From NCBI RefSeq assembly GCF_031769215.1, contig NW_026781870.1, positions 930,001 through 994,000 of the forward strand: 64,000 nucleotides of DNA. Direction: 5' to 3'. The translations under genes were made by a program, and so were the position numbers. How positions within the stretch are numbered: the first letter of the stretch is position 1; every line of letters starts with the position of its first letter. Source of the stretch: Ylistrum balloti. Its lineage: Eukaryota. The notes under the pieces were generated by a model. The model did no database searches, had not been told where the DNA came from, and was given only the letters and a program-made list of their open reading frames with translations. Positions 7,101-43,100 of the stretch are shown one piece after another.

Positions 7101-10100
7101 GACATTGAGAAACCTTAAGTCAGATAAGAAATGTTTTGAGGATAAAATGTTTGACAAAATAAATTTAAATGGATGTTACACAGCATTAGATGGGAAAATG
7201 GTCAAACCTGTTTACAAAGGCCTCTTAAGAGAGAAGATAATAATAATCTTTATAGACAGGTGACCCTTATGTACAGGTTCAATCTCAATAACATTATGAT
7301 CAGAGATTAAATTGAGACCAGAAACTTGTGGCATTTATAGACAGGTATGTGATATATAGAGGTGACATTTATAGACATGTATTTACTATGTATATGTGAC
7401 CTTTATAGACAGGTATTTGTTACATACAGGTGGCCATTAAGGCATGTTAACCTGTAGCATCAAAAAGCTACAGAAAGCTGACCTTTAACTACAGCCTGTG
7501 TCATTCTCAATTAAATATGGGTACTGTAATGTTTAGTATAGATTTAGTGTTGATTTGAAATATAAAAACTTACATTTTTAATTGTGATGTTTTGTATAAC
7601 AGAATGTCAGTGTGCAGACCCTGGTTCCTATAGTAAAGTGTGTCGAGAGGATGGCCAGTGTGCCTGTAGTACCAACTTTGCTGGATATCAGTGTAATCGA
7701 TGTGCAACCGGCTTTTACCGCTATCCAGAGTGTAGACGTGAGTATTCTAGGTGATATCAATAGTGAGTCTGAAATATCAACTGAAATCTTGATATTGAAG
7801 CTTTTAGAGCTATGCTTGCACTGAACAGTATGAGAGAGAATGAAGACTAGAGAATCAAAGATGTAAAGATATAGGTATTTTGTATATGTTGTAGAGAGAT
7901 TTGTGTTAACATACAAATTTTATAGTTGTTTCTCCTTCCAAGTTAGTGAACGTTTTGTGAGATTCATGTTTGTCATTATGTGGTATCTACTTCAGCTTGT
8001 GAATGCGACTTGTACGGAGCCATTGGACAGTCCTGCGACCAGCTGTCTGGGCAATGTGAATGTGCTCCTACATTTGAGGGGCTCATGTGTAGCAAGTGTA
8101 AAGATGGATTTTACAACTACCCAAACTGTGAAGGTAGGCCTAGAAATAATCAACATACTTAATTATACTGATTATAATCCTGAGTGGATTTCTTTCAATG
8201 ATTCTTGGGATTTTTTTATGATAGAAGATTTCAAGAAGAATATTGTTTGTGCCTGTAACCTTAGTTACCAGTCGTGAGAACTGTATTACTTTCCATGCTG
8301 AATGCTAGGCTAATTTTGTCCACTAAAAAGTTGTCATTCAGTAGTGAAAAATGTTTTAAATTTCCACATAGTGTACTTCCCCTATGTATGCTTTTTTGAT
8401 GAATTTCCCCCATTACTTAGGGGATGGTCAGTGTGACTTCAAATGAGCTGTAAGGCTTTTGTGTTTTTTAGAGTGTAACTGTAACCCTGCTGGAGCTAAG
8501 GAGATTCCAGGCTTCCCCTTGGGGGGCTGTGGTGTGGTGACACGTGGCTTGTTGTGTGAGTGTAAGGAGAAAGTGATGGGACGAATCTGTGACCAGTGTA
8601 AACCAGGCTACTACAATCTCAACAGGAACAACCCACAAGGATGTCAAGGTGAGTGTTGGTGTCAGAGGTCAGTCAACAGACTGTTAAATGGGGTCAAGGT
8701 CAGTGTACAAACTGTTAGAAGGGGCCAAGGTCAGTGCACAGACAATTAAAGGGTCAAGGTTAATTTACAGACGCTTAAAAGGGATCACTTGTTCTGGATA
8801 AGGTCCTGATTTTTAGGATGCTTCTAATTTCAATAACTTTAGGGCCAACTGTAGCATTTCAGGAAATCTTTCATGGCCTTTCAGGGTTTTGGTCTATCGA
8901 TTTTTACTTGCTAAAGATAGTTGATAGTAAAATGTCAGGAAAACAGTTTATGATGATATTTAATTACTAGCAGGTCAAGGTCTTTGTACTGAGCTTTAGG
9001 TAACAGTGTCAGCTTACTGAAGACTCCAATTTAATTAAATTCTTATCTCCTTGGAGGCAGTGATTGTAGAGAGGATCCAGGATAGTAAAATAATCTACAG
9101 GGAGTTCAAAGTGTACAAACCTACCGGGTCAAGGTCAGTACACTGACCTATCCTACAAACCAACAGGGGGAGTCAAGGTCAGTGTACTGACCTACAGGGG
9201 GAGTCAAGGTCAGTGTACTGACCTATCCTACAAACCTACAGGGGGAGTCAAAGTCGGTGTACTGACCTACAAACCTACAGGGTCAAGGTCAGTGTTCTGA
9301 CCTACAGACTACAAGAGGGGTGGGTCAAGGTCAGTCAACTGATCAATAGTTTATCTCAAAAGTATTGTATGTGTTTATTATTGTTGAATTATTGAATAGA
9401 ACATTGTTTAAACCAAGGTCATTGTACTGATTTATAGGGGTCAAGGATAATTGATCAACCTATATTACGTCATAGGTCATATGGATGAAAGTCTTTGATT
9501 AAATTATATATTCATAGAATTTGTAGTAGAATTTTAAAGAATTGAATGGTAAATTGAATTGTTTTCTATGTTAAATAATGTTTTTAAGGTGTGATGCGGC
9601 AGAATAAACAAGGATGTAACCATATGAATGGCATGATAATCTATGTAACATCCAAACAGGCTGTTCAAAGATTTCTGTAGCATGGACAATTTTGCTCTCA
9701 GTAATTCGAGTCAATAATAGTAAAAGAATAGATGTGATTTTTGTTACCTTTGTTTTCATATACTTCTGTTGATTAAATATTGTGAGTTTTAATGATTGTA
9801 GTCTTAGATAGGCATGTTTATACATCTGCCACTGTTTACTCAATTTTTGCTACGAGTCTTTGCTAAGTGATAAGTTGTTTGTTTATAAGTTGTTGTTTTT
9901 TTTGGAAAGAAAAAATAATCAAAGCATATAAGATTGGAGGTACATAGTACTTTCATGGTTTTTATTCCAGTTGAGCTTTTACATTTTTACATTTTAAAGA
10001 ACGACTTTAAAAACCTTTGTTAAAAAGACTTCCTTCTTGACTTTATTTGTCTTTGAACAACCTGGTTAACAATTAACTTGTCTAACTGTAGAGGTGTTTG

Positions 10101-13100
10101 TAACATTTTCAGCTATACCATTCCGAGGTTGTAAGTAACACATGCACAGTCAAATTATGTGTCACAATGGAATAATGCAGTTATGAGCCTAATTTGATAT
10201 TTGATAATGGTCTGACAAACTTTAGGTTAAGGAGAGGGGAGAGGGAGGTGTAGAAAATATATTTCTAAAGTGAAAGTAAGTGAGAAGAAGTACACATGTA
10301 CTTCTAGCCTAAAAGTGGTATAGTATTGTTCACGTCATGCTTAAAAATTGGAACGTATGTGAGAAATACTGGTGACACACATGATTTGACTGTATGTGCT
10401 AAGGTTCCACGATACGTGGAGACGTGATTCGCTTTTGGAATTATATTGATATATCTTACCACACTGTACTGGCGTATTAACTGTGTGTCCTCTTACAAAT
10501 TCACATGTTATTACAATAGCAGTAGGAGTCCTGTTATTTTTCACAACCAAAATTTTTTTATCTTCTTTATGAACTAATCATTTTCAACCACCCTTGTCAA
10601 TAAAACAAAATTTCAATCTCCTTTGTCAACCAATTATTGTCATGATTTATCTTCTGGAACTGATTATCATAATAATCATTTGATGTTAGATCATTGATCT
10701 CGGTGGAAAGAATTACATTTTACTGGTGAGAATTGGCTAACAATAATCTATGGTGAGAGGAGACAAATCATCGACTATCATCGGACCAGAATCCTTGTTC
10801 GTATGGACCTTTGATTATCATTTGAAATGTAACTATTTTAAGAACCATTGATTAGCCTTAATAACCAATAAGGAGAAAATTATGTGGCAGTTATGTTTAA
10901 ATAATGTTACTCGTTTTTTTATCATTATCTAATTATAAGTTTTTTTTAAAGATACTATTCACTTGTGTGTTTTGTATTGTCCTTCATTGTCAACCATTTT
11001 GTTTGTAGGCTTTTAAATAAAGACACTATGCCTATTGCACTTGATATAGATATCAATACGTGTTGCTTTCAGAAATACTGCCTCCCTTGCCTACCCAACA
11101 TTCCTTGATGTTCACGTAGAAACCTGCTGTCCCATTCATGTGGGTCAGTCCTATTTACATTTGTAGGTTCTATACATCATCATTGTTTTCGCTTTGTGTA
11201 GAGGGAATTGGTAATTACATATACACCGTTAGTAGATTTGTATTTTGAATGTTCTGCAGTATATTATATTAAATGTTCATTGTGTATTATGCTTTTCATA
11301 CCTGGACTACCACAGAGCATTGGTTTAACCCAAGTATTCAAACAGCTTCAATTTTCATATCTTGAGAGATAAATATGCTGGCAAATAGATATTGGATACC
11401 AAATTAACAGCTTATGTGAGGTTAGCAACTGTAACAATTAGCTTATCCCTGGTTACTGAAGAATTTATAATTGGCATACATCTCAACCCCAGGAACAAAA
11501 TTATTATCAAAATCATAGTGTACAATGGTCGTTTATTCTTCTGAATTTTAAGACAATTATCAGACTAATAATTAGTTGGGTTATGTTACCAGTATTCTCA
11601 TCTCTTACAACAGTGTTGATAAGTCAAAATACATCAATGAAATTGAGAATGTAACAAAAAATTAACAATGCAACAATGTAACAAAACATTAAATTGCATG
11701 CTTCATTTTCTGCATGTTTTTTCTATCTTTTTCCAGTGTTCATATGTTAATGAATATTTATGTGATTGGAATATTTTCATGTTCTTCTATTGAACATTTT
11801 TAATATCAATTCCCATGAATATTTATGAGTTAATGTCTCTTCCACAGCCTGTGAGTGCTATGCCCCAGGGACAATGTCCGGTCTAAGTAACTGTGACCCT
11901 GTTGATGGTCAGTGTATGTGTAAGACTAATGCTGGTGGCCGTCGCTGTGACACGTGTCAGCCGGGTTTCTACGGACTCAGCAATGAAAATCCATTTGGAT
12001 GTGTTGGTAAGTGTTTAAATGCAATAAATGTGCAGTAGAATAAACAAATACACAAGAAATCAATTACACTTTCATTTATACAGAAGTAGTTTATGGTAAA
12101 TTGAATTAGAAAATTTGTTTCAGTTAGTGTACTAATCTGACTGTCATCTGTCCTAATTTCCTTAATATTTATTGAATTAAAGAATATAAGAGTGCTTTTT
12201 TCATGATTAATTTTATAGGATTTAAAGGAGACTCCAAAAATTTTCCTCAACATCTGAAATGCTTTTCAGTGGAAAATTTAATTTTTAGGAACTAACCTTT
12301 TGCATGAAATTTCTGACTTTAATTTTAGTTTTGATTCTTGTTTAAAGTGGGACTGTCCAATCAAGTTAGTTTTTTAATTTGGATAATGCAACAGTTTGAC
12401 TGAGATTTTAAGATCTTGGTTATAACACCATGTATGAGCACTTCCTGATGTTGAACTTTTCATGTTGCCATAGTTTAACTGTAGCATTAGGGGATCCAAC
12501 TTTAAAGAATGGAAGCTTTCTAATGTTAGTAGTTTTTAATGTGATATTTTTATTCTGTCCCTCAGAGTGTAACTGTGACATGGGTGGATCAGTGACTCCA
12601 GTCTGTGACAGTATGACCGGCCAGTGCAGATGTAAACCAAGAGTTCGCGGTAAACGTTGTGAAAGGTCAGTAAATCCATGGGTCTTGGTACACGTTGTGA
12701 AAGGTCAGTAAATCCATGGGTCTGGGTAAACGTTGTGAAAGGTCCAACTTGAAAACGTTGTGAAAGCTTTCTAATGTTAGTAGTTTTTTATGTAAATCCA
12801 TGGGTCTGGGTAAACAATGAGAAAAGGTCAGTAAATCCATGGGTGTGGGTAAACGTTGTGAAAGGTCAGTAAATCCATGGGTGTGGGTAAACGTTGTGAA
12901 AGGTCAGTAAATCCATGGGTGTGGGTAAACGTTGTGAAAGGTCAGTAAATCCATGGGTCTGGGTAAACGTTGTGAAAGGTCAGTTAATCCATGGGTGTGG
13001 GTAAACAATGCAAAAGGTCAGTAAATCCATGGGTCTGGGTAAACGTTGTGAAAGGTCAGTAAACCAAAGGTTTTGGGCAAGCAATGCAAAAGGTATGCAA

Positions 13101-16100
13101 ACCAAGGGTCTAGAGCAAAGGATGCAAAAGGTCTGTAAACCAAGGGTTAGGGCCAAATGAGGGTCCAGGGCAAACGCAGGGTAATGTCAGTAAACCAAGG
13201 GTCCAGGCAAATGTTTTGAAAACTCAGTAAAGCTTAGATGTGGATGTTTAGTAAGATGATGTTCTATGAGTTACAGACTTATTTTATTTCTTATGAATGT
13301 TTGTCAACATCTTGTATCGACTACTTAATTCTATACTTTACCAAATGTCTATACTGACTTGAATTTCGTATGTGATACATTGTATGTTGACAGCCCAGAC
13401 ACCCTTCATTTCTATCCATCCCTCCAACAGCTGATCTATGAAATTGAGGATGGACACACGCCAGAGGGTTCCAGCATCAGATACGGTTTTGATCAGGAAA
13501 TATTTAGTAACTTTTCCTGGAGAGGATACGCCATCCTTACTCATCTGCAGGTCTGTCACAAATGCTGTCACACTGTTTACATAATATAGAATTTGTCTGT
13601 CACAAATGTTGTCACACTGTCTACATAATATAGAATTTGTCTGTCACAAATGTTGTCACACTGTCTACATAATATAGAATTTGTCTGTCACAAATGTTGT
13701 CACACTGTCTACATAATATAGAATTTGTCTGTCACAAACACTGTCACACTGTCTACATAATATAGAATTTGTCTGTCACAAATGTTGTCACACTGTACAT
13801 AATATAGAATTTGTCTGTCACAAATGTTGTCACACTGTCTACATAATATAGAATTTGTCTGTCACAAATGTTGTCACACTGTCTACATAATATAGGTTTT
13901 GTCTGTCACAAACACTGTCAGGCTTTGTCTACATAATATAGAATTTGTCTATCACAAATGTTGTCACACTGAACATAATATAGAATTTGTCTGTCACAAA
14001 TGTTGTCACACTGTCTACATAATATAGAATTTGTCTGTCACAAATGTTGTCACACTGTCTACATAATATAGAATTTGTCTGTCACAAATGTTGTCACACT
14101 GTCTACATAATATAGGTTTTATTTATTTTCCTGCTATTGAGATGTGTGATCTCATTAAACATATCTTTGATGATTGTTGAATGAGAATATTTGGATTATA
14201 CACAAGAATTCTCACTTTATTTTTGTGTGTACTTTATTTTGAGAATTTTTATTGTCAATTTTGTTTAAGAATGCTTTGATTTTTTATTTCTAGAACACTA
14301 GAGCAGTATTAATTCACTTTCACAGAAGTTTTGAATTTATAAATGAGTCCTTTTGCTAATAAGTATGAAATCTCCTACAAATTCATTTAAAGTATGCAAA
14401 ATTAGGGGATGGTCCCATGAAACAAATCCATAAGTAGTAGGTAAAAATCTACCATTTTTTACCACTCTACATGAAAAGCAAAACAAGACTACATTACATG
14501 GTACATCTAGTTTCATCAAAGTTCAGGGAGGGGTTGGAGGGAAACATGAATTTTAGTGTATATGCATTTTGCTTAAAAAGTACCATTCTAAGAAACCAGG
14601 CGAGACCTGTAACTAAGTGTAAATCTTGTATTTATATATAGCCTGAAGTCTTGATGGATGTCAATGTGATGCGACCGAGTCTGTACCGTATCATCTACCG
14701 CTTTGAAAATCTGAACGCCTATACTGTTAAGGGGGAGGTAACTCTCACTCCACAGTCAGTGGCTGACGTTAAACAGACCAGTGAGGTATTGTTTGTCCAC
14801 TCAGAGATGCCACAGTTTGTGACGGTTGGCTCTACAACTGGAGTGAAGGACTTTGTGCTGAACCCTGGCTACTGGACAATCTCTATTAAATCCCCGGACC
14901 TTTTGCTCCTGGTAAGGTCTAACAACATAACTACCTATTGACATTTACTTATATAAATCATATTATGGTGATTGTTTACAGATGTTACTCTGCTCCAGGA
15001 ACATTCTTGACTAGATCTATTTTGTAGGTTACCTTTGAATGTCACTTTGATGTTACCATACATGTCTGGTAATAAGCCCAGGGGGCTAACATTCCAATTC
15101 TGATTCATTGTTAGGAGATGAGCTTGTTACAGGACAATGAAATAGCAAATGTTTGTTATTTTACTCAACATCAATAGGTAAAAATTGGTGTATTACCAGG
15201 TTTAGGTTTGTGGGATAAAGACATTGGAATAACACAAGGAGGGTGGTGTCTCTCCTATCTATTTATAGATCAGTCCATTGTGATAACATAAGGAGGGTGG
15301 TGTCTCTCCTATCTATTTATAGATCAGTCCATTGTGATAACACAAGGAGGGTGGTGTCTCTCCTATCTATTTATAGATCAGTCCATTGTGATAACACAAG
15401 GAGGGTGGTGTCTCTCCTATCTATTTATAGATCAGTCCATTGTGATAACATAAGGAGGGTGGTGTCTCTATCTATTTATAGATCAGTCCATTGTGATAAC
15501 ACAAGGAGGGTGGTGTCTCTCCTATCTATTTATAGATCAGTCCATTGTGATAACACAAGGAGGGTGGTGTCTCTCCTATCTATTTATAGATCAGTCCATT
15601 GTGATAACACAAGGAGGGTGGTGTCTCTCCTATCTATTTATAGATCAGTCCATTGTGATAACATAAGGAGGGTGGTGTCTCTCCTATCTATTTATAGGTC
15701 AGTCCATTGTGATAACATAAGGAGGGTGGTGTCTCACCTATCTATTTATAGATCAGTCCATTGTGATAACATAAGGAGGGTGGTGTCTCTCCTATCTATT
15801 TATAGATCAGTCCATTGTGATAACATAAGGAGGGTGGTGTCTCACCTATCTATTTATAGATCAGTCCATTGTGATAACATAAGGAGGGTGGTGTCTCTCC
15901 TATTTATTTATAGATCAGTCCATTGTGATAACATAAGGAGGGTGGTGTCTCTCCTATCTATTTATAGATCAGTCCATTGTGATAACATAAGGAAGGTGGT
16001 GTCTCGCCTATCTATTCATAGATCAGTCCATTGTGATAACATAAGGAAGGTGGTGTCTCACCTATCTATTTATAGATCAGTCCATTGTGATAACATAAGG

Positions 16101-19100
16101 AGGGTGGTGTCTCTCCTATCTATTTATAGATCAGTCCATTTGTATCAGGAAAATGTTGTTTTTAGTTTCATAATTATATTACTGAATATCAAAGTCATTA
16201 GACTTACTAATGTAAGTCTAAAGGATTTCTATACCAATGTATGACATGTTTTAAATTTTTTTGTATTTCTTTAATGTGACTTTCCTTAAAGCTTAATTGT
16301 CATCACAGTATTAAAATCCAGTAGCAAAGTTTGTGATTGAAATGTCTGACCATGTTAAAATGTTGATAGCACATTGTTTTTAGTTGACTGTAATGAGATA
16401 GTTCCTTGCTTTACTAGGATTACATGGTGCTAGTACCACAAGCTTACTATGAGGCTACAGTATTGCAGCAGACAGTCACACGTCCCTGTACCATACCAGA
16501 TGATGAAGGCCCGTAAGTATTGTCCTTGGGAACAATTAAAAACTTTTTAAGGCTGTAACAGGATATTTGTTAATGATATTTGTATGACTGATCTTACTAA
16601 GGTACTTTAAAATGACAGGTGTTTTTGAAATTTTGGCAGTTTTACCGAACACTTGTGGCCGGATGTGAGGTATCTTTTTTGTTTTGATAAAAAATAACTT
16701 GAAAATATCTTTTACAAAATAAACTTGATTGTGTTAATGCTGGACATTTTTCTTTTTGGTTATGAAATTTTTTAGTTGTACGTATTTGCATATTTCATTT
16801 AGTTGTTTACAGTGAGCAGTTGGGTACCAACATAGTGAATTGTAAGTTGATGAGAGACTGGAGTCCTTCTCATAGATATATCCTTCTGTGCTATACATTG
16901 GAGGAACATTTTACTTATATGATTTTGATTTTGGCAAATGTTTTAGGTGTCTGTATTATAACTACCCTGACCTGTCACGTTTCCCTGCGGTGTCTGGTGA
17001 GAGTGGGTACACTATTGATACAGATGGCAATGTGGTTCCCACACAAGTATTCAGTGACAGAGACATCCTAGATGAACTTGATCTCGACGGAATGGCCAAG
17101 TTAGACAAAAACCAGGTCAGTCATCAATATAACTTTCAAATGAATTTGAAAAATTGTGTGTACCTTTCTGTAGCTTTGTGGCTACCATTGCCACATAGAC
17201 AATATATATAATACTATGTTCATGACTGTACAATTGATGGTAGGTTTGTCTCCAAGAAATCGTAGAAAATTTCTCTTCTTAAAAATCATAGGTAATCACA
17301 CATGTTGATTTCAATAATGATTTAGTCTCATTAAACTGAGTGATGATTACTTAATATTTACATATCCCTGCAAAAGGGAGGTTTGTTTTTTTAAGGAGGG
17401 TTAGAACAAATTATAGTGATTCTAATAATAAAAAGCAAGAATAGAGTTTCCAGATGAACTGTAATTAGTATGACAGTTTTTATTGTTTCATACTTTACAG
17501 AATTCACTAAATCTGAACCTGGCAGTTCCTGATGCTGGTCAGTACATCATAGTGGTCAACTACTTTGCCCTATCCAACACAACACAGGAAATAAATGTCA
17601 CCATGAGGACTCCAGAAGGGGACTACCTTGGAACTGTGTCTCTTAGCAACTGTAAATACAGGTAACCATAGTGATGAATATCTGGTCTCAAATGATAGTG
17701 GTCAAGTGTTCGGGTCTTTTGGTTAAAATGCTTTTTGAGCTCTTTACAGGTTCATAAATGTGACTTAGAAATAATCTTTTAAGTCCTTGTGAATCCTGGA
17801 ATAATGGATTAATCCTACAAAGGTTGTTAATATTGTAGTAAAAATACCTCTGTTACAGTGTACTATGTCGTGAAGTACTGAAGGACCTAAACAGTATGCC
17901 AGCTCTCACCTTCATCAACGGAACTGCCCAGATCATCCTCACTGGTGACGATGACGTGGATGTAGCAATTGTAAGAATCCATTTTCTCAAGTTCAAACAT
18001 TCAAAAATATTGGTTATGATCATCATTTCATGCATGTGTAATATATAATAAGATTTTACATTCTGCTATATTTATGTAAGAAACTGTATTAGATTGAAAA
18101 GGTTTTAACTTTTCAATGTAGGGCTCTGTAGTGGCAATCCCATATCCTGATTGGACTCTCGGATACATTCGTCCTAGCATCATCTGCATCCGTATCAACG
18201 GCATGTAAGTAGCCACATCAACTCATGTCCTCCATTACGTCAGGTAATCGTTTTTTAAGGAGACAAAAATGCTTCAATGAATTATGCAATAGTTTAAACA
18301 ACATGTTTTTTTTTTTTCTCAGCTTCTTGTTACTTTAATGTCTGGAAGATAATGATTGAATTGTCTGACGTGATTCTTTATAAGGAGATAACGTTTTTGA
18401 TTATTGTTACTAGATCTAAACACATGGTATATCAGAAAGTTCCGAGATTTGTGGACCTTGACATCTTATGCTTATTTTGGTCATTTTGTTGATGTCAACA
18501 TTTTTTTCATTAAATTTTCATGATATTTTTACAATGCAAAAAACTCTTCGCTATAGATTATCAAATAGTTGATACTGAACTATAAAGCTGTATGTGTTGG
18601 CTTTCAGATGTATTGGTTCCCAGTGGTCAGTTCCAGCAGACTCTCGTAGGGTTGAGTTTGAGGACCCACCCAATCAAGACCTGCGTGTTGGACCCAACGA
18701 GTTCCCATCCTGGATTGTGGGCGATAATATTGGATTAGTGCATCTAAATGATACAGTAGTAAGTTAGATCGACAAATATTGATAAAATTTTGATATCCAT
18801 GCAAATATCAAACTTACTTAAAAGTTTCAACTGTATGTAAATTTCAGGAATATCTTAAAAAAAAAAAAAACAAAATTTCATGCTTAAAAAAAATTGTGAT
18901 GATTTTTACATTTTACATATTGACTTACAGTCAACTATTGAGGTGGAGACCACAGTTCAGAATCCTGACCGCTATGTGTTTGTCGTCCACTTCTACCTAC
19001 CAAGTGAAGCAGGAATTGACCTCCCAGTTACCATTCATGCTGATGGTCAAGTATATAGTGGTCAGTATTCAAATTTTACTAAAAAAAATGAATTGCTGCA

Positions 19101-31100: not shown

Positions 31101-34100
31101 ACATTGAAACCCGTTGAATATCATGTTCCATTTGTTGGGGGAAAATGTGATAATAAGTGGAATGTGACATAAACAGTTGACACATTTTTTTCCGGACGTC
31201 TTAACCCAGAAGTTAATTTTCTGATGTGCCAAACTAACAGAAATTGTTTGTAGGTAAAACAATTGAAATTATTTGTTTTTCCCATAAGAACAATGAGTTT
31301 CCATAGCTTTCATTTGTTTATTCTTTGAAATACCTAAATTGGAATCATGAATTATCTTGAATGATGATGTCATCATTATGTAATATTCCATTTATATGTG
31401 GTTCATACATGACACTTGTCATCAGCTGATGTTTTGCCACATAATTCATTCTTTCTTTGATATATAGGCTTTATAATGGTGTATCATAGCAAAGTTGATA
31501 TATGTACAGTGTTTATCTCTGCAACTTTGATCAAATGTGATCTGAAGATCGCAGCTCAAGCATTACCACAAAAAAAAAGCTAACAGAGTGTGTATTGTTC
31601 AACTTTGAAACGCCATGTTTCACTGACTATTAATGTAAGTGGTTATTTTTAATGGCCAAACAGATGTCATGAAAATGGCATATGGAAAATAATGGTAATA
31701 CATAGAAACATGTGTTTCAAGAAAATGTGATATTAACTGGAAAGTGACATTAACAGAAGTGACATTAAGTGGGTTTCACTATACATATTCACTATACATA
31801 TTACTAAACAGTTAACTGATGCTTTTAATGGCAACAATATAAAGTGGAGTAAAGTGGATTATCATGTTGCTGTGTGTGTACAGAGTGTGACTGTGAGGCA
31901 GATGGTGCTATGACCTGTAATCCATTTACTGGGGTGTGTCAGTGTCTGGAGGGTGTCACTGGTGAAAGGTGTGATAGATGCCTTCCACGCTGGATCCTCG
32001 TACCCAATGAGGGATGCCGTCGTAAGTTGTCTCTTCACCCATGAGGAAAGATAACCTCATTAAAAAAACTATTAAAAGAACTTTTTGTCAGTACTTTGTT
32101 TTATTTTTTGAAGTAAACTGCTTGTACTTCTGTTGTCAAAAAGGAATTAGGCTACAATTAATGTATGAATTTTGATCTACATCTATTTTAGTGTAGCATA
32201 AAATAATGAATCGATGCAAACACAAAATGATGTCATGGCAATATTTTTACGCTGTCTTTAGGTCATTAACGTCATTAACAATCGCAGCTTATCTGTTCCA
32301 TCCCCTCTTTGTATTCTAGCCTGTGACAGTTGTGTGCACATTTTGCTGGATGACTTAGAATTCATGGATAGAAATCTAACCAGCTTGACCGGTAACCTGG
32401 CAACAGTCTCTGTTGGAGTGACAGCCATGAAGCGTCTGCAAGCCATCAACGATTCAGTCGCCATTAATGGAGTATGTTTTTAGTCAAGTTTCTATTAAAG
32501 TGTGTTACAGAAATCAAAGTGAAAAACGGTGATAGAATCGGACATTTTCATTTTCTTTTTAACGATTTAACCTGATATTTTGATAACAGTTTTGATAAAT
32601 AAATCAGAACTACCAATGCCCTGTGTATATAGTGCTAGTGTTGTGTATTATATAAGGGTACCAATGGCCGTTAAATATGGTAATGTACATAATATTTTCT
32701 GTAAAGAAAAAAGATATAACAAAAAAGGATCAGGGCATCAAAAACCAAGATAAATTCCTGTAAATAAAATCTTGAAGTGAAAGATCTTTTCTCCTCCATG
32801 GTTCTTGAAGTAAAAGATCTTTTCTCCTCCATGGTTCTTGAAGTAAAAGATCTTTTCTCCTCCATGGTTCTTGAAGTAAAAGATCTTTTCTCCATGGTTC
32901 TTGAAGTAAAAGATCTTTTCTCCTCCATGGTTCTTGAAGTAAAAGATCTTTTCTCCTCCATGGTTCTTGAAGTAAAAGGTCTTTTCTCCTCCATGGTTCT
33001 TGAAGTGAAAGATCTTTTCTCCTCCATGGTTCTTGAAGTAAAAGATCTTTTCTCCTCCATGGTTCTTGAAGTAAAAGATCTTTTCTCCTCCATGGTTCTT
33101 GAAGTAAAAGATCTTTTCTCCTCCATGGTTCTTGAAGTAAAAGGTCTTTTCTCCTCCATGGTTCTTGAAGTAAAAGATCTTTTCTCCTCCATGGTTCTTG
33201 AAGTGAAAGATCTTTTCTCCTCCATGGTTCTTGAAGTAAAAGATCTTTTCTCCTCCATGGTTCTTGAAGTGAAAGGTCTTTTCTCCTCCATGGTTCTTGA
33301 AGTGAAAGGTCTTTTCTCCTCCATGGTTCTTGAAGTAAAAGATCTTTTCTCCTCCATGGTTCTTGAAGTGAAAGATCTTTTCTCCTCCATGGTTCTTGAA
33401 GTAAAAGATCTTTTCTCCTCCATGGTTCTTGAAGTGAAAGATCTTTTCTCCTCCATGGTTCTTGAAGTGAAAGAATGGTTCTTGAAGTAAAAGATCTTTT
33501 TCCTCCATGGTTCTTGAAGTAAAAGATCTTTTCTCCTCCTCCATGGTTCTTCCAAGTGAAGTAAAAGATCTTTTTCCTCCATGGTTCTTGAAGTAAAAGA
33601 TCTTTTCTCCTCCATGGTTCTTGAAGTGAAAGATCTTTTCTCCATGGTTCTTGAAGTGAAAGGTCTTTTCTCCTCCATGGTTCTTGAAGTAAAAGATCTT
33701 TTCTCCTCCATGGTTCTTGAAGTAAAAGATCTTTTCTACTCCATGGTTCTTGAAGTAAAATAACTTTTCTCCTCCATGGTTCTTGAAGTGAAAGACCTTT
33801 TCTCTATGGTTCTTGAAGTAAATTAACTTTTCTCCTCCATGGTTCTAGCCTAAGATCGACAAAATGAAAGCAGCAGAAGATGCATTTTCCCTGACACCAC
33901 TGAGGCAGGCCGTTACAGAGATCATAGAACTGGCAGATGACACCGTGGCAATGGTCAGTATTTGTGAATCTTTTGGTTGATGTAAGAAGTCAAAGGTAAA
34001 CTATCGCAATAATGTAGATGGTTAGTAATTTACTAATGGTGATACGGTGGTGACTTGTGTTATATGGCAATTTTTTTACCCTAACCATGCAGAATTATTT

Positions 34101-37100: not shown

Positions 37101-40100
37101 TTAGACTTCTGTATTGAACTAAAAGAAAACATTAACTGATGGATTATATATTTTCATGTCATAAGCACACGTGTGAAATATCAGAAGTCCCAACTTGCCA
37201 AACCACCAGCTCCCCAACCAACACCCCAATTTTTGTTTTTGCTTAGTGGGCCCTACCATATCAGATAAGAGTGAATTCTGTCTTTTGTTTTTGACAGTGT
37301 GTACACAGACACGCGTGACACTGCTGCCCTAGCACTTCGAGCAGCCAACGCCTACGAGGGTATTGTCATGGCAATCAATGATGCTCAAAACGCCTCACAA
37401 GCGGCAACAGGGGCAGCGTCCAGTGCACTGGGAAAGGTAACACATGAACTAGTGACTATGATATTTGACTTCATTGTATGTAATTTTATATGCAAATTAA
37501 TTGCAAGTTGCTGATGTTAGATACTGCTAAATGCTGAGCTATGTCCACTAATTGTCAGGCTATGCCTTGCTTGTGTGTTTTATTGTTGTTGTTACATGTA
37601 AAGCTGTCCTACCAGTGGTATGGTGTATCAGTCAGATTTTAAACAGCAAGCTTTTGATGGTACAGCATTATATTGATACGAATTGAGAGGAAATTAGGTC
37701 TTTGTTGCTTTGTATATGTATATATATGTATGTTATATATAACACCAGTTGAAGAAATAAAAAAATGCCCTTTCATATTTCAAGCGCAATACATTTTATG
37801 GGCACTCTTTATGTGTTGTATGTGAACTGGTGTATTGTTTAAAAAGAATTGTAGTGGTTGTAATGATAGAAACTTTGATAGGAGTGCATGTATCTTCTGG
37901 TTTCCATTTTCCTTCTCATTTCATTACCATCAAAAAATGTCCTTTTTTACAGACACTTGTCTTTCCTATATCCTAGTATAATGACAAATATAAATGAAAT
38001 TTTACTCTTCTGAAATTTAGAATTTACTTATTTCTGTCTTTTTAAATTGAATTTTGTTTTTGGTTGAGAGAGTGGCATCATCCAGTCTTTGCGAGTTAAT
38101 TATTGATGAGAGCACGGCATCGTTACACTAATTTTGGGGTTTTTATTTCAGGTGTTCCTAATGCCCGTAAGGACTCGTATTTATACACAATATATATATG
38201 TACTATAGTTACTTACATAACAACACGAAGGCTTCAGCTCTCTTTGGTAACCTTGGTAACGCCTAATGTAACAGGGCTGTGCAATGACAATGCGTGCTTC
38301 ACCAAAGTCTGTGACATTATATTTGTGGATTCTTAAAATGATTTTGAATTTGAAGAGCTGTTTCCTCCATTACACATATAACTGTAAAACCTGTCTAAAC
38401 TGAACACATACCAATATTTTTGTCCAAATATGCACAGAATGTGCAGGTTTTTATCTCATAATTGCATATTTATTATAAATCTGGTTTATGCAGGTTTACA
38501 AATTGATTTGATATATGTAAGTACACTAAAAGTGTTTGTTTGTTCCATTTCTTTTATAAGGAAAGTTTCTTCTTAAAAGGCTCTTAGACTTGAACAAGAG
38601 AAATTTGAAAACCGTTACATAGATCACAGCTATACTACACATTGACTGGGTATAGGGAAGAGAAAGCGATAAAAGGCTAAATATTGTGGTGATAGAAAGT
38701 GAAGTAAACAGAAAAGAGGATGTGTTTATCAGGCACGTATGCTTATTAGGTTGAGTACTGTACAAGTTAAAACATCAAACCCAAATTCATGATCTTTGAT
38801 TCCACAGGGTTCAGTTTAGACAGGTTAAACACTTTGATCATAGTTCTAGAATAGAATTGAGATTTGGAGTGAAGAGAAAAAACCCTTGAATAGATTAGAA
38901 ACTCATAATAACATGGACGTCCCTTAAAAAGGATACCCTTAATTCCTATGTGCCTTTCTTTCCTTGATTCTTTGTGACCCCTTACTGGTAGATTAGTGGA
39001 ATAGATCTTTCACCATTTGGAGGTATACTTCTCACAGATGTTTGTCAAAGTCATTTTAAAATTATAACTTACTGAATTGTGGAATTGATTCCAAATACAT
39101 TGGAGAATAATTCCCCTTTTTTTTTTGTCTTTTCGACATGACCGTGGGTTGAAAACACTGGTAGAAGTTTAACATTGGTGTTTCATTGATTGTGATATCT
39201 GTAAAGTGTTCACATGATTTCTGTTTGTACCAACTGGTTGCCGTAGTAACATAATATACCCTCTATTTAAGGTTCCTGGTACATATGTATGGATAACTCG
39301 TACGCTCTTCACTAACACATTGCAGCTGTAGTGTATTCTTTTCTTGGACTTGTTGCAATTTTAGGAAACAATTTTAATGAATTTCTGTGTTGCATGACAA
39401 GATTATTGATTCCTTTTGAATTAAAATTAATTTGGATGCAAATTATGAGAGGATCCATTAGATGCAGTGTATCCTGATTTGTAGGTAAATATGTAGATCA
39501 ATAAGAAGAGAATACAGCTACATTGAAATATATTCTTTAGTTGTGATAGTGCCATTCATAAACCTCATAATATGTATTGTTGAACTATATGTAAGATTTA
39601 CAACCCTTCTGGATCTTGTGTTTTACTGGGTATTAGATACATAGAATATCAGTGATCTGACTATTTCTGATATCCAATATAATTAAGTAAAAAAAATTGT
39701 ATAACATGAAATTTTTGTAGAATATTAATTGTTTTCATGGCTTTAGACAAACCACGAAAATAAAAAGCAATATATAAGACTGAATATTCAGTATCTATGA
39801 TATTGTAGACATTCATGTGACATTATGGAAATTTGCACCCCTTTAAAAATGTGCCTACAAACTTTATATGGTGGAAGTATAGTATATATATATTGTTATA
39901 GTCATTTGTAATTTTTGTTATTCCCCCTTAACAAAGCTGATGTGTAAAACACAAGCTTATATCGTGAGAGGGGGAAAAAGGCAAGGGGTTGGGGATGGGG
40001 GGTGGGGGAGTTACATACTTGATGATTGGCATAGTTCTTTTGCAGCAGTATTAAACACAAAAACTAAAACAATCTAAAGTTAATTGATCTGTATCATAAC

Positions 40101-43100
40101 TTTTACATCTGTGAATTGAATGGAGTTCATATCCAAAAAATACTGTGTTGATGAAGCTGTTTCACTACACAACCACCCTAGCAAGGAATAAAGGTAGCTT
40201 TTATCATGGGTCATCAATGAAGCTGTTTCACTACACAACCACCCTAGCAAGGAATAAAGGTAGCTTTTATCATGGGTCATCAATGGTTAAACCTACGTAA
40301 AAATGAGGAAGAAATCAGTAGACATGGGCTTATCAGTGGGTAAGCTTTTAATATGGTTGGGCTTAACAATCAGTAAGCACAAATTTATTAATGGTAGTCG
40401 GCAACACTAAACCCGGGAGATGATGGCATGAGATTATACTACAGAACAGCTCATTCATATTATCTTACATTAGCAGTAATATATAAGACAAAGTCTTGTA
40501 TATTTTGTGTTCATTTATTTGATATGTTTGAATTTTTATCCTAGAAATATTGAGAATTTACCAATTTCAGTATAAAATATGTTAAATAATGACCGAGAAG
40601 GTAGTATCCAGTGAAAAGCTGCAGTGTCAGTATTGGAGGAAGTTGGTGAATATAAAAATATTTTATTAATTTTCCACCTTATTCTGTGAATCTTTTCTAG
40701 AGCAATGAGTCTGTATGATGCATTTAACAACAACCTGACTTTTGCAGTCATTTGGGGTTGAGGAAGTGGCTGCCTCCAAAAGAGCTAGAAGTGCAGAGTT
40801 GCTTGCTGCTGCTGAAAAGAAGCTTGAAGAGACTGACATGGGTAGGTCAATTTTAGATGCTGAGCTTCTATAGCCATCAACAGATTTCATAAGCTGAAAC
40901 CTTGTTATTACTTCACACAAAAAAAAACACAACTACACACATCTAACTTTGAGAGAGGGATTAAGTGTGTTTTGAAATTTTTTCTTGTAATTGTTGCTGT
41001 AATTTTGCAAATTTTATTTGTGAGAATTATAAACCACTATGCACATATTACAACACCTTGTCTGTTTGAAAGAAAATGGTTTGCCTCCCTTCGTCCATCC
41101 AATCAAAGTTTCATATTCAAATGTGTGATAAAATCTTTATTCTATGACTTGACTAAAAGGGTCATGTGTATAACGACATTTTCACATCATTTTCTATATA
41201 TTATATGGAATATAAAATATGAAAAGTAATCCACTTTATATAAGTAATTATATACAATACTTTATTCATCACATAATTATTATACCTCTTCTTCAAGTTC
41301 TAGAAGCTGCAACTGGCAGCTTTAGCTGCTAAAAACACTGTTAATGGTTCATTATCCCAGGATGCACACGTTGGTTTAATCACATTTTGAAAATGGTGAT
41401 TTAAAAATCTTGTCAAAAAGCTCCAGAACTACTTCTTGTGAAAAATGTTTTGTGAATATTGTCCTAGTTTAACTATGATGGTTGAAACAGATGATTCACT
41501 CATGGCAGTCACATATCAGATAGACTCGGGGAAAGTTTGCAATACTGTTAATAGGCTGAAATTTAGGAAAACACAAAGAAGTAAATTGCTGCTAATCTGT
41601 GTATGATAATAGAGTCAGGGGACGGTTTGGTGTCAGGATGGAGGGCCATGAGTAGTTTATTTGAAGTTGTTTAAAAGGTGTGTTAGATTTCTAATTACAC
41701 AAGAAGGAATCCTTGTAAGGCAAGAGTTTACTGGACTTTCTTATAGAACAAGAGGATAGTTATATGGGTGTGAAATCTGTAGATACTCAGTAGAAGATTT
41801 GTTTTGTGTTTAGACTTACAGGAAAGGCTCGAGGATGCAACCTTCAACACAGACAAGGTGGAAGACACAAACCAGGAGTCAAAAGACCAACTTGACAATG
41901 TCAACTTTCAACTGCCATCACTGGAAACCGGTAGGTAGACAGAATGTTTCTTCACGTCACACTTTATCATTCGGGTACATGTTGTATATGGCAAGTTTGC
42001 AAGGTATGACAAAATGAAAGATACACAAGAAATGGAGACTCATTTGAAAACTTCAAAATTTAAATCATTTTCAATTTTCTTTACCTTTACCTGTAATCCC
42101 AGTCTGAGTCACTTTTGGGAAAAAAATCAAATTTTTCAACGACAGAAGTATTTACTGTGAATAGTTTGCAAAATAAGGAACTTGTAAATATAAAGAAATG
42201 CAGTTGATTGTGATCATAACATGAACGACACTTGCGTTTGAACTAGGAAATGGGTCATATAATTTATGACTTGATACCTTGATAGGAAACGTTGGGCAGA
42301 GGGCTCAAGATGCCATAATGCAAGCAGAAGAAGCAAGTGGTATGACGAAGGATGCCGGTAACAAGGTCAATGACATCATTCGAAAGTTGCCGTCAAACAA
42401 AGCCAAGGTCGAGCAACTCATCAATGATTCCACAAAGACCAAGAAAAACACCCAATACGCTGATCAGCAGAGTAAGTGTCTTATTGATATCAGAATTTAA
42501 ATTAAGAGGTCAGAGTTCAACAAAATCGGGAAAAAAGGAAGGTCTTTGTAAATCAGATTCAAATTTACAGTGAATCCTACTTTGTATTTAAACCTAAGTT
42601 TCTATACTACAGCTCAGGATGTGAAAGAGAAAGTGCCGCAGATCATGGACTTGATCAAGCTGGTTGGAACACAATCTAGGAATGTTCGTAGTCTTCGGGA
42701 CAGTGTTATGGGCAACATCACTGATCTCCGTGAGAAGATTATACTAGCCCGTGATGAGGCAAACAGGGTGAGATAACTACCTTTGCATGTCCTCCAATAT
42801 TCTGGAAGATTTAAACTCCTGACATAAGCACAATAATCTTGTAGAGACAATTCCTCTTGTAATACTAAACTGATTTTAGTATTATAATTACTGGTATCAT
42901 GACCTTACTATGCTAACCTTGTTTTTTATTCATGATTACAGATCCGAGTTGGAATGGAGTTCCTAGGAAACACAACAGTTGCCCTTAGAAATCCACCAGA
43001 TGTTGACTTGGCTGGGTCATACAGTCGCTTTACCACTTACATTCGTACCCAACAAAGTGATGCCCTGCTGGCTTACATCGGTGAAGAATTCATCCCTGAA

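What the first reader, a model, noticed from the sequence alone, without database searches (positions are those of the whole stretch)
8649..40747. Candidate microexon program tuning a laminin alpha chain, hidden in the two long repeat-poor introns
Seen: many of the longer laminin introns here carry minisatellites or transposon-like pieces, but 8649-11847 and 37437-40747 (each over 3 kb) are mostly unique sequence. Each holds tiny AG...GT-bounded, frame-preserving, stop-free segments (18 and 27 nt; 15 and 15 nt). RBFOX-type TGCATG elements occur at 11695, 11711, 37885 and 39391. Established: 3-27-nt in-frame microexons are a bilaterian neural splicing program (SRRM3/4 eMIC, RBFOX). Inference: this laminin may have regulated micro-insertions at an LE-LE junction and in the distal coiled coil, which I do not recall being described for an invertebrate laminin alpha.
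Basis: partly seen in the sequence, partly recalled or inferred. Interest (0 to 1): 0.75.

Follow-up and report, generated by a model that had tools for sequence, protein, structure and literature searches.

The report
Two conserved scallop laminin microexons
Two tiny optional exons (18 and 15 bases) hidden in long introns of a scallop laminin alpha gene look real: three scallop genera keep them with intact splice signals and sister species' public gene models already include them, but nothing shows they are nerve-specific.

Summary
The window is the Ylistrum balloti (saucer scallop) laminin alpha gene of the LanA/epi-1 type.

AG..GT-bounded, in-frame, stop-free segments of 3-27 nt number 103 and 85 in the two introns; shuffles give 92 and 72. 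TGCATG occurs 35 times in the window against 35.2 expected.

Two of its four picks are nevertheless real:
- **ME1 (10113-10130, 18 nt)** encodes AIPFRGS. It matches the only difference between Mizuhopecten yessoensis RefSeq isoforms X1 and X2 (ELPFRG), exactly between LE9 and LE10.
- **ME2 (38152-38166, 15 nt)** encodes VFLMP. It matches the VFLTP insert in the Pecten maximus RefSeq protein at the same coiled-coil junction.

Both lie in the best-conserved island of their intron, and AG, GT, frame and peptide are kept in all three genera. A gene-wide screen of 1287 candidates returned only these two. Pearl oyster, Pacific oyster and mussel lack them.

The Ylistrum model omits both. The 27-nt candidate and the second 15-nt candidate are not conserved. 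Neural SRRM/RBFOX control is unsupported: no RNA run exists for this species and no conserved UGC or GCAUG lies near either exon.

The scan has confirmed other microexons in this genome, but not this pair.

The parts
8472..8648 (+). Constitutive exon encoding most of LE9; it ends with the first base of a split codon (phase 1)
   Evidence: Exact spliced match to the public Ylistrum protein P0269; 87-91% identical to the Mizuhopecten and Pecten exons
8649..11847 (+). Intron between LE9 and LE10 (3199 nt) that hosts ME1. It is 4885 nt in Pecten and 4552 nt in Mizuhopecten, but only about 236-845 nt in pearl oyster, Pacific oyster and mussel
10113..10130 (+). ME1: an 18-nt phase 1-1 cassette microexon. 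Inclusion turns Q-A-C into Q-AIPFRGS-C, lengthening the LE9-LE10 linker from 2 to 8 residues
   Evidence: Flanked by TTTTCAG and GTAAGT. Splice matrix scores 5.5 (acceptor) and 7.0 (donor), rank 3 of 276. Homologues at L001 23536-23553 (AVPFRGS) and L002 29592-29609 (ELPFRGS) keep AG and GT. ELPFRG is the sole difference between Mizuhopecten isoforms X1 and X2
10088..10176 (+). Conserved island around ME1, the highest three-way identity in the intron (0.85 in 40-nt windows; intron mean 0.34)
   Evidence: alignment A1
10356..10515 (+). Two further conserved intronic islands (10356-10428 and 10476-10515), 230-390 nt downstream of ME1; possible splicing control elements (inference)
11712..11716 (+). 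It lies 132 nt upstream of the LE10 exon and 1.6 kb downstream of ME1
11848..12006 (+). Constitutive exon encoding LE10
   Evidence: Pfam EGF_laminin starts at the first Cys after the insert
37298..37436 (+). Constitutive coiled-coil exon ending ...SSALGK (phase 0)
37437..40747 (+). Coiled-coil intron (3311 nt) that hosts ME2. It is 5036 and 5333 nt in the other scallops and about 154-1481 nt in the three non-scallop bivalves
38152..38166 (+). ME2: a 15-nt phase 0-0 cassette microexon encoding VFLMP, inserted between ...ALGK and SFGV...
   Evidence: Flanked by TTATTTCAG and GTAAGG. Splice matrix scores 10.1 and 6.9, rank 1 of 276. Homologues at L001 48475-48489 and L002 64991-65005 both encode VFLTP. 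The Pecten maximus RefSeq protein P0267 carries VFLTP at this junction
38092..38221 (+). Conserved island around ME2, with three-way identity up to 0.93. This is higher than the pairwise identity of the flanking coding exons (about 71-80%)
37491..37672 (+). Conserved intronic stretch just downstream of the upstream exon, rich in UGC/YGCY motifs
38322..38406 (+). Conserved intronic island downstream of ME2
38814..38938 (+). Conserved intronic island
39295..39354 (+). Conserved intronic island with a CACTAAC branch-point-like motif followed by TTGCAG
40748..40841 (+). Constitutive coiled-coil exon starting SFGVEEV...

Best explanation
The window is the Ylistrum balloti laminin alpha gene (LanA/epi-1, alpha-3/5 type). 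Its two long introns each hide one true cassette microexon that arose in the scallop lineage and is missing from this species' public gene model.

**ME1 (10113-10130, 18 nt, phase 1).** It is spliced in between the LE9 and LE10 exons. Every other LE-LE junction of this rod has exactly two residues between the last Cys of one module and the first Cys of the next. ME1 replaces that two-residue spacer with eight residues, [A/E][I/V/L]PFRGS. The inferred effect is an exposed, flexible hinge in an otherwise stiff short arm. The invariant Pro-Phe-Arg followed by Gly-Ser could also be a site for trypsin- or kallikrein-like proteases.

**ME2 (38152-38166, 15 nt, phase 0).** It inserts VFL[M/T]P at a Gly-rich break (..ALGK|SFGV..) in the C-terminal third of the alpha-chain coiled coil. 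The inferred effect is to enlarge a non-helical loop in the long arm.

**Shown.** Sequence, splice sites, frame and peptide are conserved across three genera. The microexons are identical in position to inserts in RefSeq proteins of two sister species. For ME1, both the including and the skipping form are modelled in one species.

**Inferred.** That the exons are used in Ylistrum itself, what controls their inclusion, and what they do to the protein.
For: **Identity of the window.** It is 100% identical to the Ylistrum balloti record GCA_031769215.1.

**ME1 in proteins.** Mizuhopecten isoforms X1 (P0173) and X2 (P0268) are 100% identical except for ELPFRG plus an S/A change at the LE9-LE10 junction. 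The window segment would give AIPFRGS and Pecten AVPFRGS. Of 126 orthologue representatives, 125 have a single residue at this junction.

**ME2 in proteins.** Pecten maximus P0267 carries VFLTP between ALGK and SFGV. The window encodes VFLMP and Mizuhopecten VFLTP.

**DNA conservation.** Both microexons lie in the top conservation island of their intron (0.85 and 0.93 three-way identity, against intron means of 0.34 and 0.37).

**Gene-wide screen.** 1287 in-frame AG..GT segments were found in 70 introns. 35 have good splice scores. Only ME1 and ME2 are conserved in both other scallops.

**Splice strength.** Their scores lie within the range of the gene's real exons, ranking 1 and 3 of 276.

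**Protein context.**
- All other LE-LE spacers are 2 residues.
- In an AlphaFold model of LE8-LE11 with the insert, the only internal stretch with pLDDT below 50 is FRG of the insert; the flanking blocks score 87-92.
- Pro-Phe-Arg-pNA peptides are used as chromogenic substrates for the trypsin-like protease KLK2 (PMC4256358).
Against: - No read-level RNA evidence was seen. No RNA run holds this locus, and the one run found is DNA. Searches for transcript fragments across both junctions found only one genomic fragment or nothing.
- Support from sister species rests on RefSeq models whose underlying reads I could not inspect.
- The Pecten model has an odd, frame-shifted stretch in the very next exon, so it is not a clean model.
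- Each microexon is annotated in only one of the three species.
- The flanking intron sequence is as conserved as the exons, so conservation alone cannot separate coding constraint from splicing-control constraint.
- The low pLDDT of the insert is partly by construction, since only 1 of 48 aligned sequences has it.
- The hinge and protease-site readings are untested inferences from vertebrate enzymology.
Confidence: 0.8

Rival explanations
1. One reading: the two microexons belong to the bilaterian neural microexon programme. On this view SRRM3/4 (eMIC domain) and RBFOX include them in ganglia and other tissues skip them.
For: - The size, the frame preservation, the strong donor sites and the conserved flanking introns are typical of that class.
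- ME1 is modelled as alternative in Mizuhopecten.
I did not check it.
- One GCATG core at 11712 is conserved in all three scallops.
- A UGC-rich conserved stretch lies at 37518-37600.
Against: - TGCATG is at chance frequency.
- No GCATG lies within 150 nt of either microexon in any species.
- No TGC occurs in the 150 nt upstream of ME1 in any of the three species. Upstream of ME2 there is one TGC per species, and it is not at a shared position in all three.
- Laminin alpha is made mainly by non-neural cells (general knowledge).
- No tissue data were available.
Confidence: 0.2
2. The conserved islands are intronic control elements or some other non-coding feature. On this view the inserts in the Mizuhopecten and Pecten proteins are annotation artefacts and nothing is spliced in.
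For: - No reads were seen.
- The flanks are as conserved as the putative exons.
- The Pecten model is irregular just downstream.
- The Ylistrum model omits both.
Against: - Two independent annotations in two species place inserts exactly on the two segments that an independent gene-wide conservation screen singles out.
- AG, GT, a length divisible by three and an open frame are kept in all three genera.
- The changes inside ME1 are conservative (I/V/L, A/E) or synonymous (CGA/CGT), with PFRG invariant.
- Gene predictors do not place 15-18-nt exons, or issue two isoforms, without transcript alignments (general knowledge of the NCBI pipeline).
- No Rfam family matches anywhere in the window.
Confidence: 0.08
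3. The microexons are constitutive exons that automatic annotation simply missed, rather than regulated alternative exons.
For: - Short exons are often missed by aligners (abstract of PMC7821500, listed).
- ME2 is in the only Pecten model.
- ME2 has a very strong acceptor, at the 89th percentile of the gene's real exons.
Against: - Mizuhopecten has both forms for ME1.
- ME2 is absent from all three Mizuhopecten proteins (two RefSeq isoforms and one GenBank entry) and from the Ylistrum model, although the DNA is intact.
- Strong conservation of long intronic flanks is the usual mark of regulated exons, not constitutive ones (general knowledge).
Confidence: 0.1
4. The candidates are chance AG..GT segments with no function. 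This is the right reading for the reader's 27-nt candidate, for its second 15-nt candidate and for the other roughly 270 segments in the two introns.
For: - The counts equal shuffle expectation.
- 271 of the 276 segments of 3-51 nt lose AG, GT or frame in the other scallops.
- Most have poor splice scores.
Against: This reading does not hold for ME1 and ME2.
Confidence: 0.02

Closest known systems
Mizuhopecten yessoensis laminin subunit alpha-like isoforms X1 and X2 (XP_021350179.1 and XP_021350180.1)
   Same: It is the orthologous gene, with exon identities of 80-95%. X1 contains the orthologue of ME1 (ELPFRG) at the same LE9-LE10 junction and X2 skips it. The genomic microexon has the same length, phase and splice sites.
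   Different: Two residues differ (E/A and L/I). The Ylistrum RefSeq model (XP_060062600.1) has no such isoform. Mizuhopecten models do not include ME2, although its DNA is intact.
Pecten maximus laminin-like protein epi-1 (XP_033739061.1)
   Same: It is the orthologous gene. It contains the orthologue of ME2 (VFLTP) at the same coiled-coil junction.
   Different: One residue differs (T/M). The model lacks ME1, although the DNA is intact. Its next exon is read in a shifted frame.
Bilaterian neural microexon programme (SRRM3/4 eMIC-dependent, 3-27-nt in-frame exons)
   Same: Size, frame preservation, strong donor site and long conserved flanking introns are shared. At least ME1 is modelled as alternative.
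   Different: No tissue data exist. No UGC lies next to the acceptor sites and no nearby conserved GCAUG was found. The host is an extracellular matrix protein, and the exons are restricted to scallops rather than ancient.
Short alternative inserts in LG-domain proteins. Agrin and neurexin splice sites are recalled from memory. In this gene family the examples are Mytilus VLLSY, Littorina EFWYGL, Biomphalaria QSFAHK and the Lingula 9-aa insert.
   Same: These are 5-9-residue optional inserts placed exactly at exon junctions of the same laminin alpha orthologue in other lophotrochozoans.
   Different: Those inserts lie in LG domains. The scallop inserts lie between LE modules and in the coiled coil. 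The orthologous scallop intron (51063-51365) shows no equivalent of the Mytilus/Littorina insert.

Membership tests
Laminin alpha chain, LanA/epi-1 (alpha-3/5) type | LN domain, LE arrays interrupted by laminin IV/B domains, a long coiled coil (Laminin_I/II) and C-terminal LG domains in one protein of about 3600 residues | tested here: met
   The exon chain matches P0173 and P0269 from residue 131 to the end. The orthologues carry PF00055, PF00053, PF00052, PF06009, PF00054 and PF02210.
Cassette microexon | An exon of at most 27-30 nt, divisible by three, open in the host frame and bounded by AG and GT | tested here: met
   ME1 is 18 nt (phase 1-1) and ME2 is 15 nt (phase 0-0). Both have splice scores within the range of the gene's real exons.
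Cassette microexon | Present in mature mRNA | tested here: inconclusive
   The inserts are present in RefSeq proteins of Mizuhopecten (ME1) and Pecten (ME2). No reads or transcript contigs could be inspected, and no RNA run exists for Ylistrum.
Cassette microexon | Both the inclusion and the skipping form exist | tested here: inconclusive
   For ME1, isoforms X1 and X2 exist in one species. For ME2, inclusion and skipping are seen only in models of different species.
Cassette microexon | The exon and its flanking intron are conserved across species | tested here: met
   Both are conserved in three pectinid genera and form the top islands of their introns.
SRRM3/4 (eMIC)-dependent neural microexon | Neural-specific inclusion | not testable with these tools
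   No RNA run holds this locus.
SRRM3/4 (eMIC)-dependent neural microexon | UGC motif close upstream of the acceptor site | tested here: not met
   No TGC occurs in the 150 nt upstream of ME1 in three species. Upstream of ME2 there is one TGC at about -60, and it is not shared by Pecten. The cis code in molluscs is unknown, so this is weak evidence.
RBFOX-regulated exon | Conserved (U)GCAUG in the flanking intron near the regulated exon, more frequent than chance | tested here: not met
   There are 35 sites against 35.2 expected. None lies within 150 nt of ME1 or ME2 in any species. Only the core at 11712 is conserved, 1.6 kb from ME1.

The most novel reading that the evidence does not exclude
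ME1 is a splicing-controlled cleavage switch. Inclusion would place an exposed Pro-Phe-Arg|Gly-Ser linker between LE9 and LE10, so that a trypsin- or kallikrein-like protease could cut off the LN-LEa polymerisation arm in chosen tissues or stages. ME2 would retune the long-arm coiled coil. Together they would be a scallop-specific way of changing basement-membrane assembly by splicing. They would also be one case of a wider, undescribed habit of lophotrochozoan laminin alpha genes: each lineage acquires its own 5-9-residue optional inserts at exon junctions.
Probability: 0.12. Interest if true: 0.7.

Novelty: new member of a known kind. Interest (0 to 1): 0.45.

Why it matters
- **Annotation.** The result corrects the public gene model of Ylistrum balloti. 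Two isoform-defining exons are missing from it. Separately, half an LE module is replaced by repeat-derived sequence.
- **Method.** A simple three-genome screen separates two real microexons from about 1300 look-alikes. Long, repeat-poor introns that have expanded relative to outgroups are a useful pointer.
- **Biology.** A core basement-membrane protein is tuned by lineage-specific micro-insertions. One is placed at the only LE-LE joint that becomes a long linker, with a protease-like motif. The other lies in a break of the coiled coil.
- **Breadth.** RefSeq isoforms show comparable inserts at other junctions in mussels, periwinkles, Biomphalaria and Lingula. I found no paper describing any of them.

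Tried and rejected
- **RNA evidence.** The run search found a single run. Laid on 37200-41000, it covers the intron continuously and shows no splice joints, so it is DNA.
- **Transcript fragments.** A word search with the Mizuhopecten junction-1 fragment found only one genomic fragment from another scallop. Its contigs do not reach ME1. The junction-2 fragment found nothing. The exact look-up of isoform X1 found no contig.
- **Deeper conservation.** The orthologous introns of Pinctada, Magallana and Mytilus hold no PFRG-like or VFLxP-like in-frame segment and no DNA similarity to either island.
- **Heptad register across junction 2.** A simple a/d-position score gave ambiguous registers and shifts that were inconsistent between species. 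I draw no conclusion on whether 5 residues restore or break the heptad.
- **RNA structure around ME2.** RNAalifold proposes a stem that loops out the exon, but three near-identical sequences give no covariation. I draw no conclusion.
- **Rfam.** There were no hits in the window, so the islands are not known snoRNAs or miRNAs.
- **Mytilus/Littorina LG-domain microexon.** I looked for its equivalent in scallop intron 51063-51365 and found none.
- **Literature.** I found no paper on laminin alpha microexons in invertebrates.
- **Joined model.** I sent no joined (spliced) model of the window to any search tool. Searches used single-exon references or stored public proteins. Exon pieces were compared with the public protein only inside scripts, to obtain coordinates.

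Full report
**What the window is**

The + strand from about 800 to 55713 carries a laminin alpha gene of the LanA/epi-1 (alpha-3/5) type. The window is 100% identical over 56.7 kb to Ylistrum balloti assembly GCA_031769215.1, contig JAUZWB010001339.1 (locus L003). Ylistrum balloti belongs to the Pectinidae.

The public protein for this locus is XP_060062600.1 (P0269, 3622 aa). An exact spliced walk of that protein along the window gave about 70 validated exon junctions.

**Checking the observation as written**

- The two introns are 3199 and 3311 nt. They are mostly unique sequence, with about 9% and 4% tandem repeat.
- The four TGCATG sites exist. However, the window holds 35 on both strands against 35.2 +/- 6.0 in shuffles.
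- AG..GT-bounded, frame-preserving, stop-free segments of 3-27 nt are not rare. There are 103 and 85 of them, against 92 +/- 9 and 72 +/- 9 in dinucleotide shuffles.

**Two of the picks are real nonetheless**

The closest protein is Mizuhopecten yessoensis 'laminin subunit alpha-like isoform X1' (P0173), with 80-95% identity per exon. I aligned the window's LE9 and LE10 exons separately to P0173. P0173 has seven residues, ELPFRGS, where a direct join of the window's exons gives one residue. Of 126 orthologue representatives, 125 have a single residue at this junction.

The 90% cluster of P0173 holds five proteins: isoform X2 (P0268), Pecten maximus XP_033739061.1 (P0267), the Ylistrum protein, and a GenBank Mizuhopecten entry. 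Their alignment shows two things.
- X1 and X2 are identical except for ELPFRG (plus S for A) at this junction.

Read in the host frame, these give AIPFRGS and VFLMP.

**DNA-level test**

I fetched the Pecten (L001) and Mizuhopecten (L002) loci and aligned the orthologous introns.

| | ME1 | ME2 |
|---|---|---|
| Window coordinates | 10113-10130 | 38152-38166 |
| Pecten (L001) homologue | 23536-23553 | 48475-48489 |
| Mizuhopecten (L002) homologue | 29592-29609 | 64991-65005 |
| Peptides (Ylistrum / Pecten / Mizuhopecten) | AIPFRGS / AVPFRGS / ELPFRGS | VFLMP / VFLTP / VFLTP |
| Kept flanks | TTTTCAG before, GTAAGTAAC after | TTTCAG before, GTAAGG after |

For ME1, the one change in the Arg codon is synonymous (alignment A1). 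For ME2, mean column identity is 86% over 215 nt (alignment A2).

In 40-nt windows, three-way identity peaks at 0.85 around ME1 and 0.93 around ME2. The intron means are 0.34 and 0.37. The ME2 island is better conserved than the coding exons on either side of it, which are about 71-80% identical pairwise.

**How selective the test is**

- Of the 276 candidate segments of 3-51 nt in the two introns, only five keep AG, GT, frame and openness in both other scallops. These are ME1, a nested 15-nt variant of ME1, ME2, and two 9-nt segments inside the same islands.
- No 27-nt candidate and no second 15-nt candidate in intron 2 survives.
- A splice-site matrix built from the gene's own exons ranks ME2 first and ME1 third of the 276.
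- Across all 70 phased introns there are 1287 in-frame segments. 35 have both splice scores at or above 3. Exactly two are conserved without gaps in both scallops: ME1 and ME2.

Two independent lines therefore converge on the same two segments: public annotation in sister species, and an unbiased conservation screen.

**How old they are**

Introns lie at both junctions in Pinctada imbricata, Magallana gigas and Mytilus trossulus. They are short there (about 236, 845 and 587 nt at junction 1; about 1180, 154 and 1481 nt at junction 2). They contain nothing like either microexon.

Within this sample the microexons are scallop-specific. They go together with a several-fold expansion of the host introns.

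**Where the inserts fall in the protein**

*ME1.* Cysteine spacing in P0173 shows LE modules starting at residues 280, 339, 409, 454, 500, 546, 592, 637, 683, 748 and 801. At every junction the last Cys of one module and the first Cys of the next are separated by two residues. The exception is LE9-LE10 in isoform X1, where the spacer is eight residues. Pfam's EGF_laminin match for LE10 begins at the Cys right after the insert.

An AlphaFold model of LE8-LE11 with the insert used 48 aligned orthologues and reached mean pLDDT 82.5. Its only internal stretch below pLDDT 50 is FRG of the insert, and the neighbouring blocks score 87-92. Only one aligned sequence has the insert, so this is partly by construction.

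The invariant core Pro-Phe-Arg followed by Gly-Ser resembles substrates of trypsin- and kallikrein-like proteases. Pro-Phe-Arg-pNA peptides are used as KLK2 substrates (PMC4256358). This is a lead, not a test.

*ME2.* It falls at residue 2473 of P0269. That is about 63% of the way along the coiled coil and 84 residues before Pfam Laminin_II (2557-2679). It sits at the edge of a Gly-rich, polar interruption that is also present in oyster, pearl oyster and mussel. A simple heptad-register score across the junction was ambiguous.

**Regulation**

- No RNA run holds this locus.
- The single run found is DNA of another individual or haplotype. It shows no variant in ME2.
- The sites at 37885 and 39391 are not conserved. 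At 11695 the hexamer is kept in Mizuhopecten only. At 11711 only the GCATG core is kept in all three species, and it lies 1.6 kb from ME1.
- No GCATG lies within 150 nt of either microexon in any species. No TGC lies in the 150 nt upstream of ME1.
- Several further conserved intronic islands exist (10356-10428, 10476-10515, 37491-37672, 38322-38406, 38814-38938, 39295-39354). They are candidates for control elements. The stretch at 37518-37600 is UGC-rich.
I did not verify it.

**A wider pattern**

RefSeq isoform pairs of the same orthologue differ by one short insert in several other species.

| Species | Insert | Position in the longer isoform |
|---|---|---|
| Mytilus (three species) | VLLSY or VLQSY | about 3435 |
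| Littorina saxatilis | EFWYGL | 3418 |
| Biomphalaria glabrata | QSFAHK | 2856 |
| Lingula anatina | 9 residues | 3111 |
| Aplysia californica | 25 residues | 1239 |

The Mytilus and Littorina inserts lie at the same LG-domain junction. That junction corresponds to window intron 51063-51365, which holds no equivalent in Ylistrum. I found no paper describing any of these inserts.

**Verdict**

The generic observation is chance. Two of the four candidates, 10113-10130 and 38152-38166, are very probably genuine, scallop-specific cassette microexons of laminin alpha that this genome's annotation missed. Their use in Ylistrum, their tissue pattern and their effect on the protein remain to be shown. 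This is a new member of a known kind, of moderate interest.

I sent no joined spliced model of the window to any search tool, and I referred no step.

Noticed in passing
window 22470-23374: The Ylistrum RefSeq protein replaces about 26 residues of an LE module (in other scallops ...CKENIEGRKCDTCHIGFYAFPHCQE) with sequence read from a tandem repeat in the intron. The expected half-LE exon is not found anywhere between 22540 and 23303. This is probably an assembly collapse in the repeat array plus a patched gene model.
   Followed up: partly
L001 52325-52417 (Pecten maximus exon orthologous to window 40748-40841): The Pecten exon after ME2 reads SFGVGE... in one frame and ...SAELLAAVKKLRETDMG in another. 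Either there is a 1-nt indel in the assembly or the gene is really shifted there. The RefSeq protein follows the shifted frame for about 16 residues.
   Followed up: partly
proteins P0291/P0168, P0286/P0287, P0289/P0292, P0283/P0165, P0273/P0152, P0300/P0176; corresponds to window junctions 51062|51366, 43635|44563 and 47223|47625: RefSeq isoform pairs of the same laminin alpha orthologue differ by single 5-9-residue inserts in LG domains in Mytilus (3 species), Littorina, Biomphalaria and Lingula. The Mytilus and Littorina inserts share one junction. This suggests recurrent, lineage-specific microexon gain in this gene.
   Followed up: partly
window 8649-11847 and 37437-40747 versus L004, L005 and L006: The two microexon-bearing introns are 3.2-5.3 kb in the three scallops but only about 0.15-1.5 kb in pearl oyster, Pacific oyster and mussel.
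   Followed up: yes
window 38052-38150: A GGCATC motif occurs twice upstream of ME2 (in GAGAGTGGCATC and GGCATCGTT) and is invariant in all three scallops. RNAalifold pairs the second copy with the acceptor and exon start, and pairs 38063-38076 with about 38209-38222 so that the exon is looped out. There is no covariation to test this.
   Followed up: partly
window 37518-37600: A conserved intronic stretch 80-160 nt downstream of the upstream exon is rich in UGC/YGCY motifs (GCTGCTAAATGC..., TTGCTTGTGTG). It could be a binding platform for splicing factors.
   Followed up: no
window 39312-39345: A conserved CACTAAC branch-point-like motif followed by TTGCAG lies deep in the intron, with no conserved open exon after it. 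It may be a decoy or a recursive-splicing-like site.
   Followed up: no
window 6386-6915, 15219-16241, 32768-33760: Several other introns carry long minisatellites that stay open in one frame. The array at 6507-6847 gives repeated [10 protein letters not shown]-like units and is also found in the Pecten and Mizuhopecten introns.
   Followed up: no
window 2067-2241 and 2488-2880: Repeat-like pieces shared with the other scallop loci lie in the intron 1046-3347. Two similar open stretches (...FRALEL..F.Q.G...) suggest a transposon-derived element.
   Followed up: no
window 10113-10127: A nested 15-nt variant of ME1 uses a GT three bases upstream (GAG|GTTGTA) and is also conserved in all three scallops. 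The donor is weak, and the Mizuhopecten model uses the 18-nt form.
   Followed up: partly
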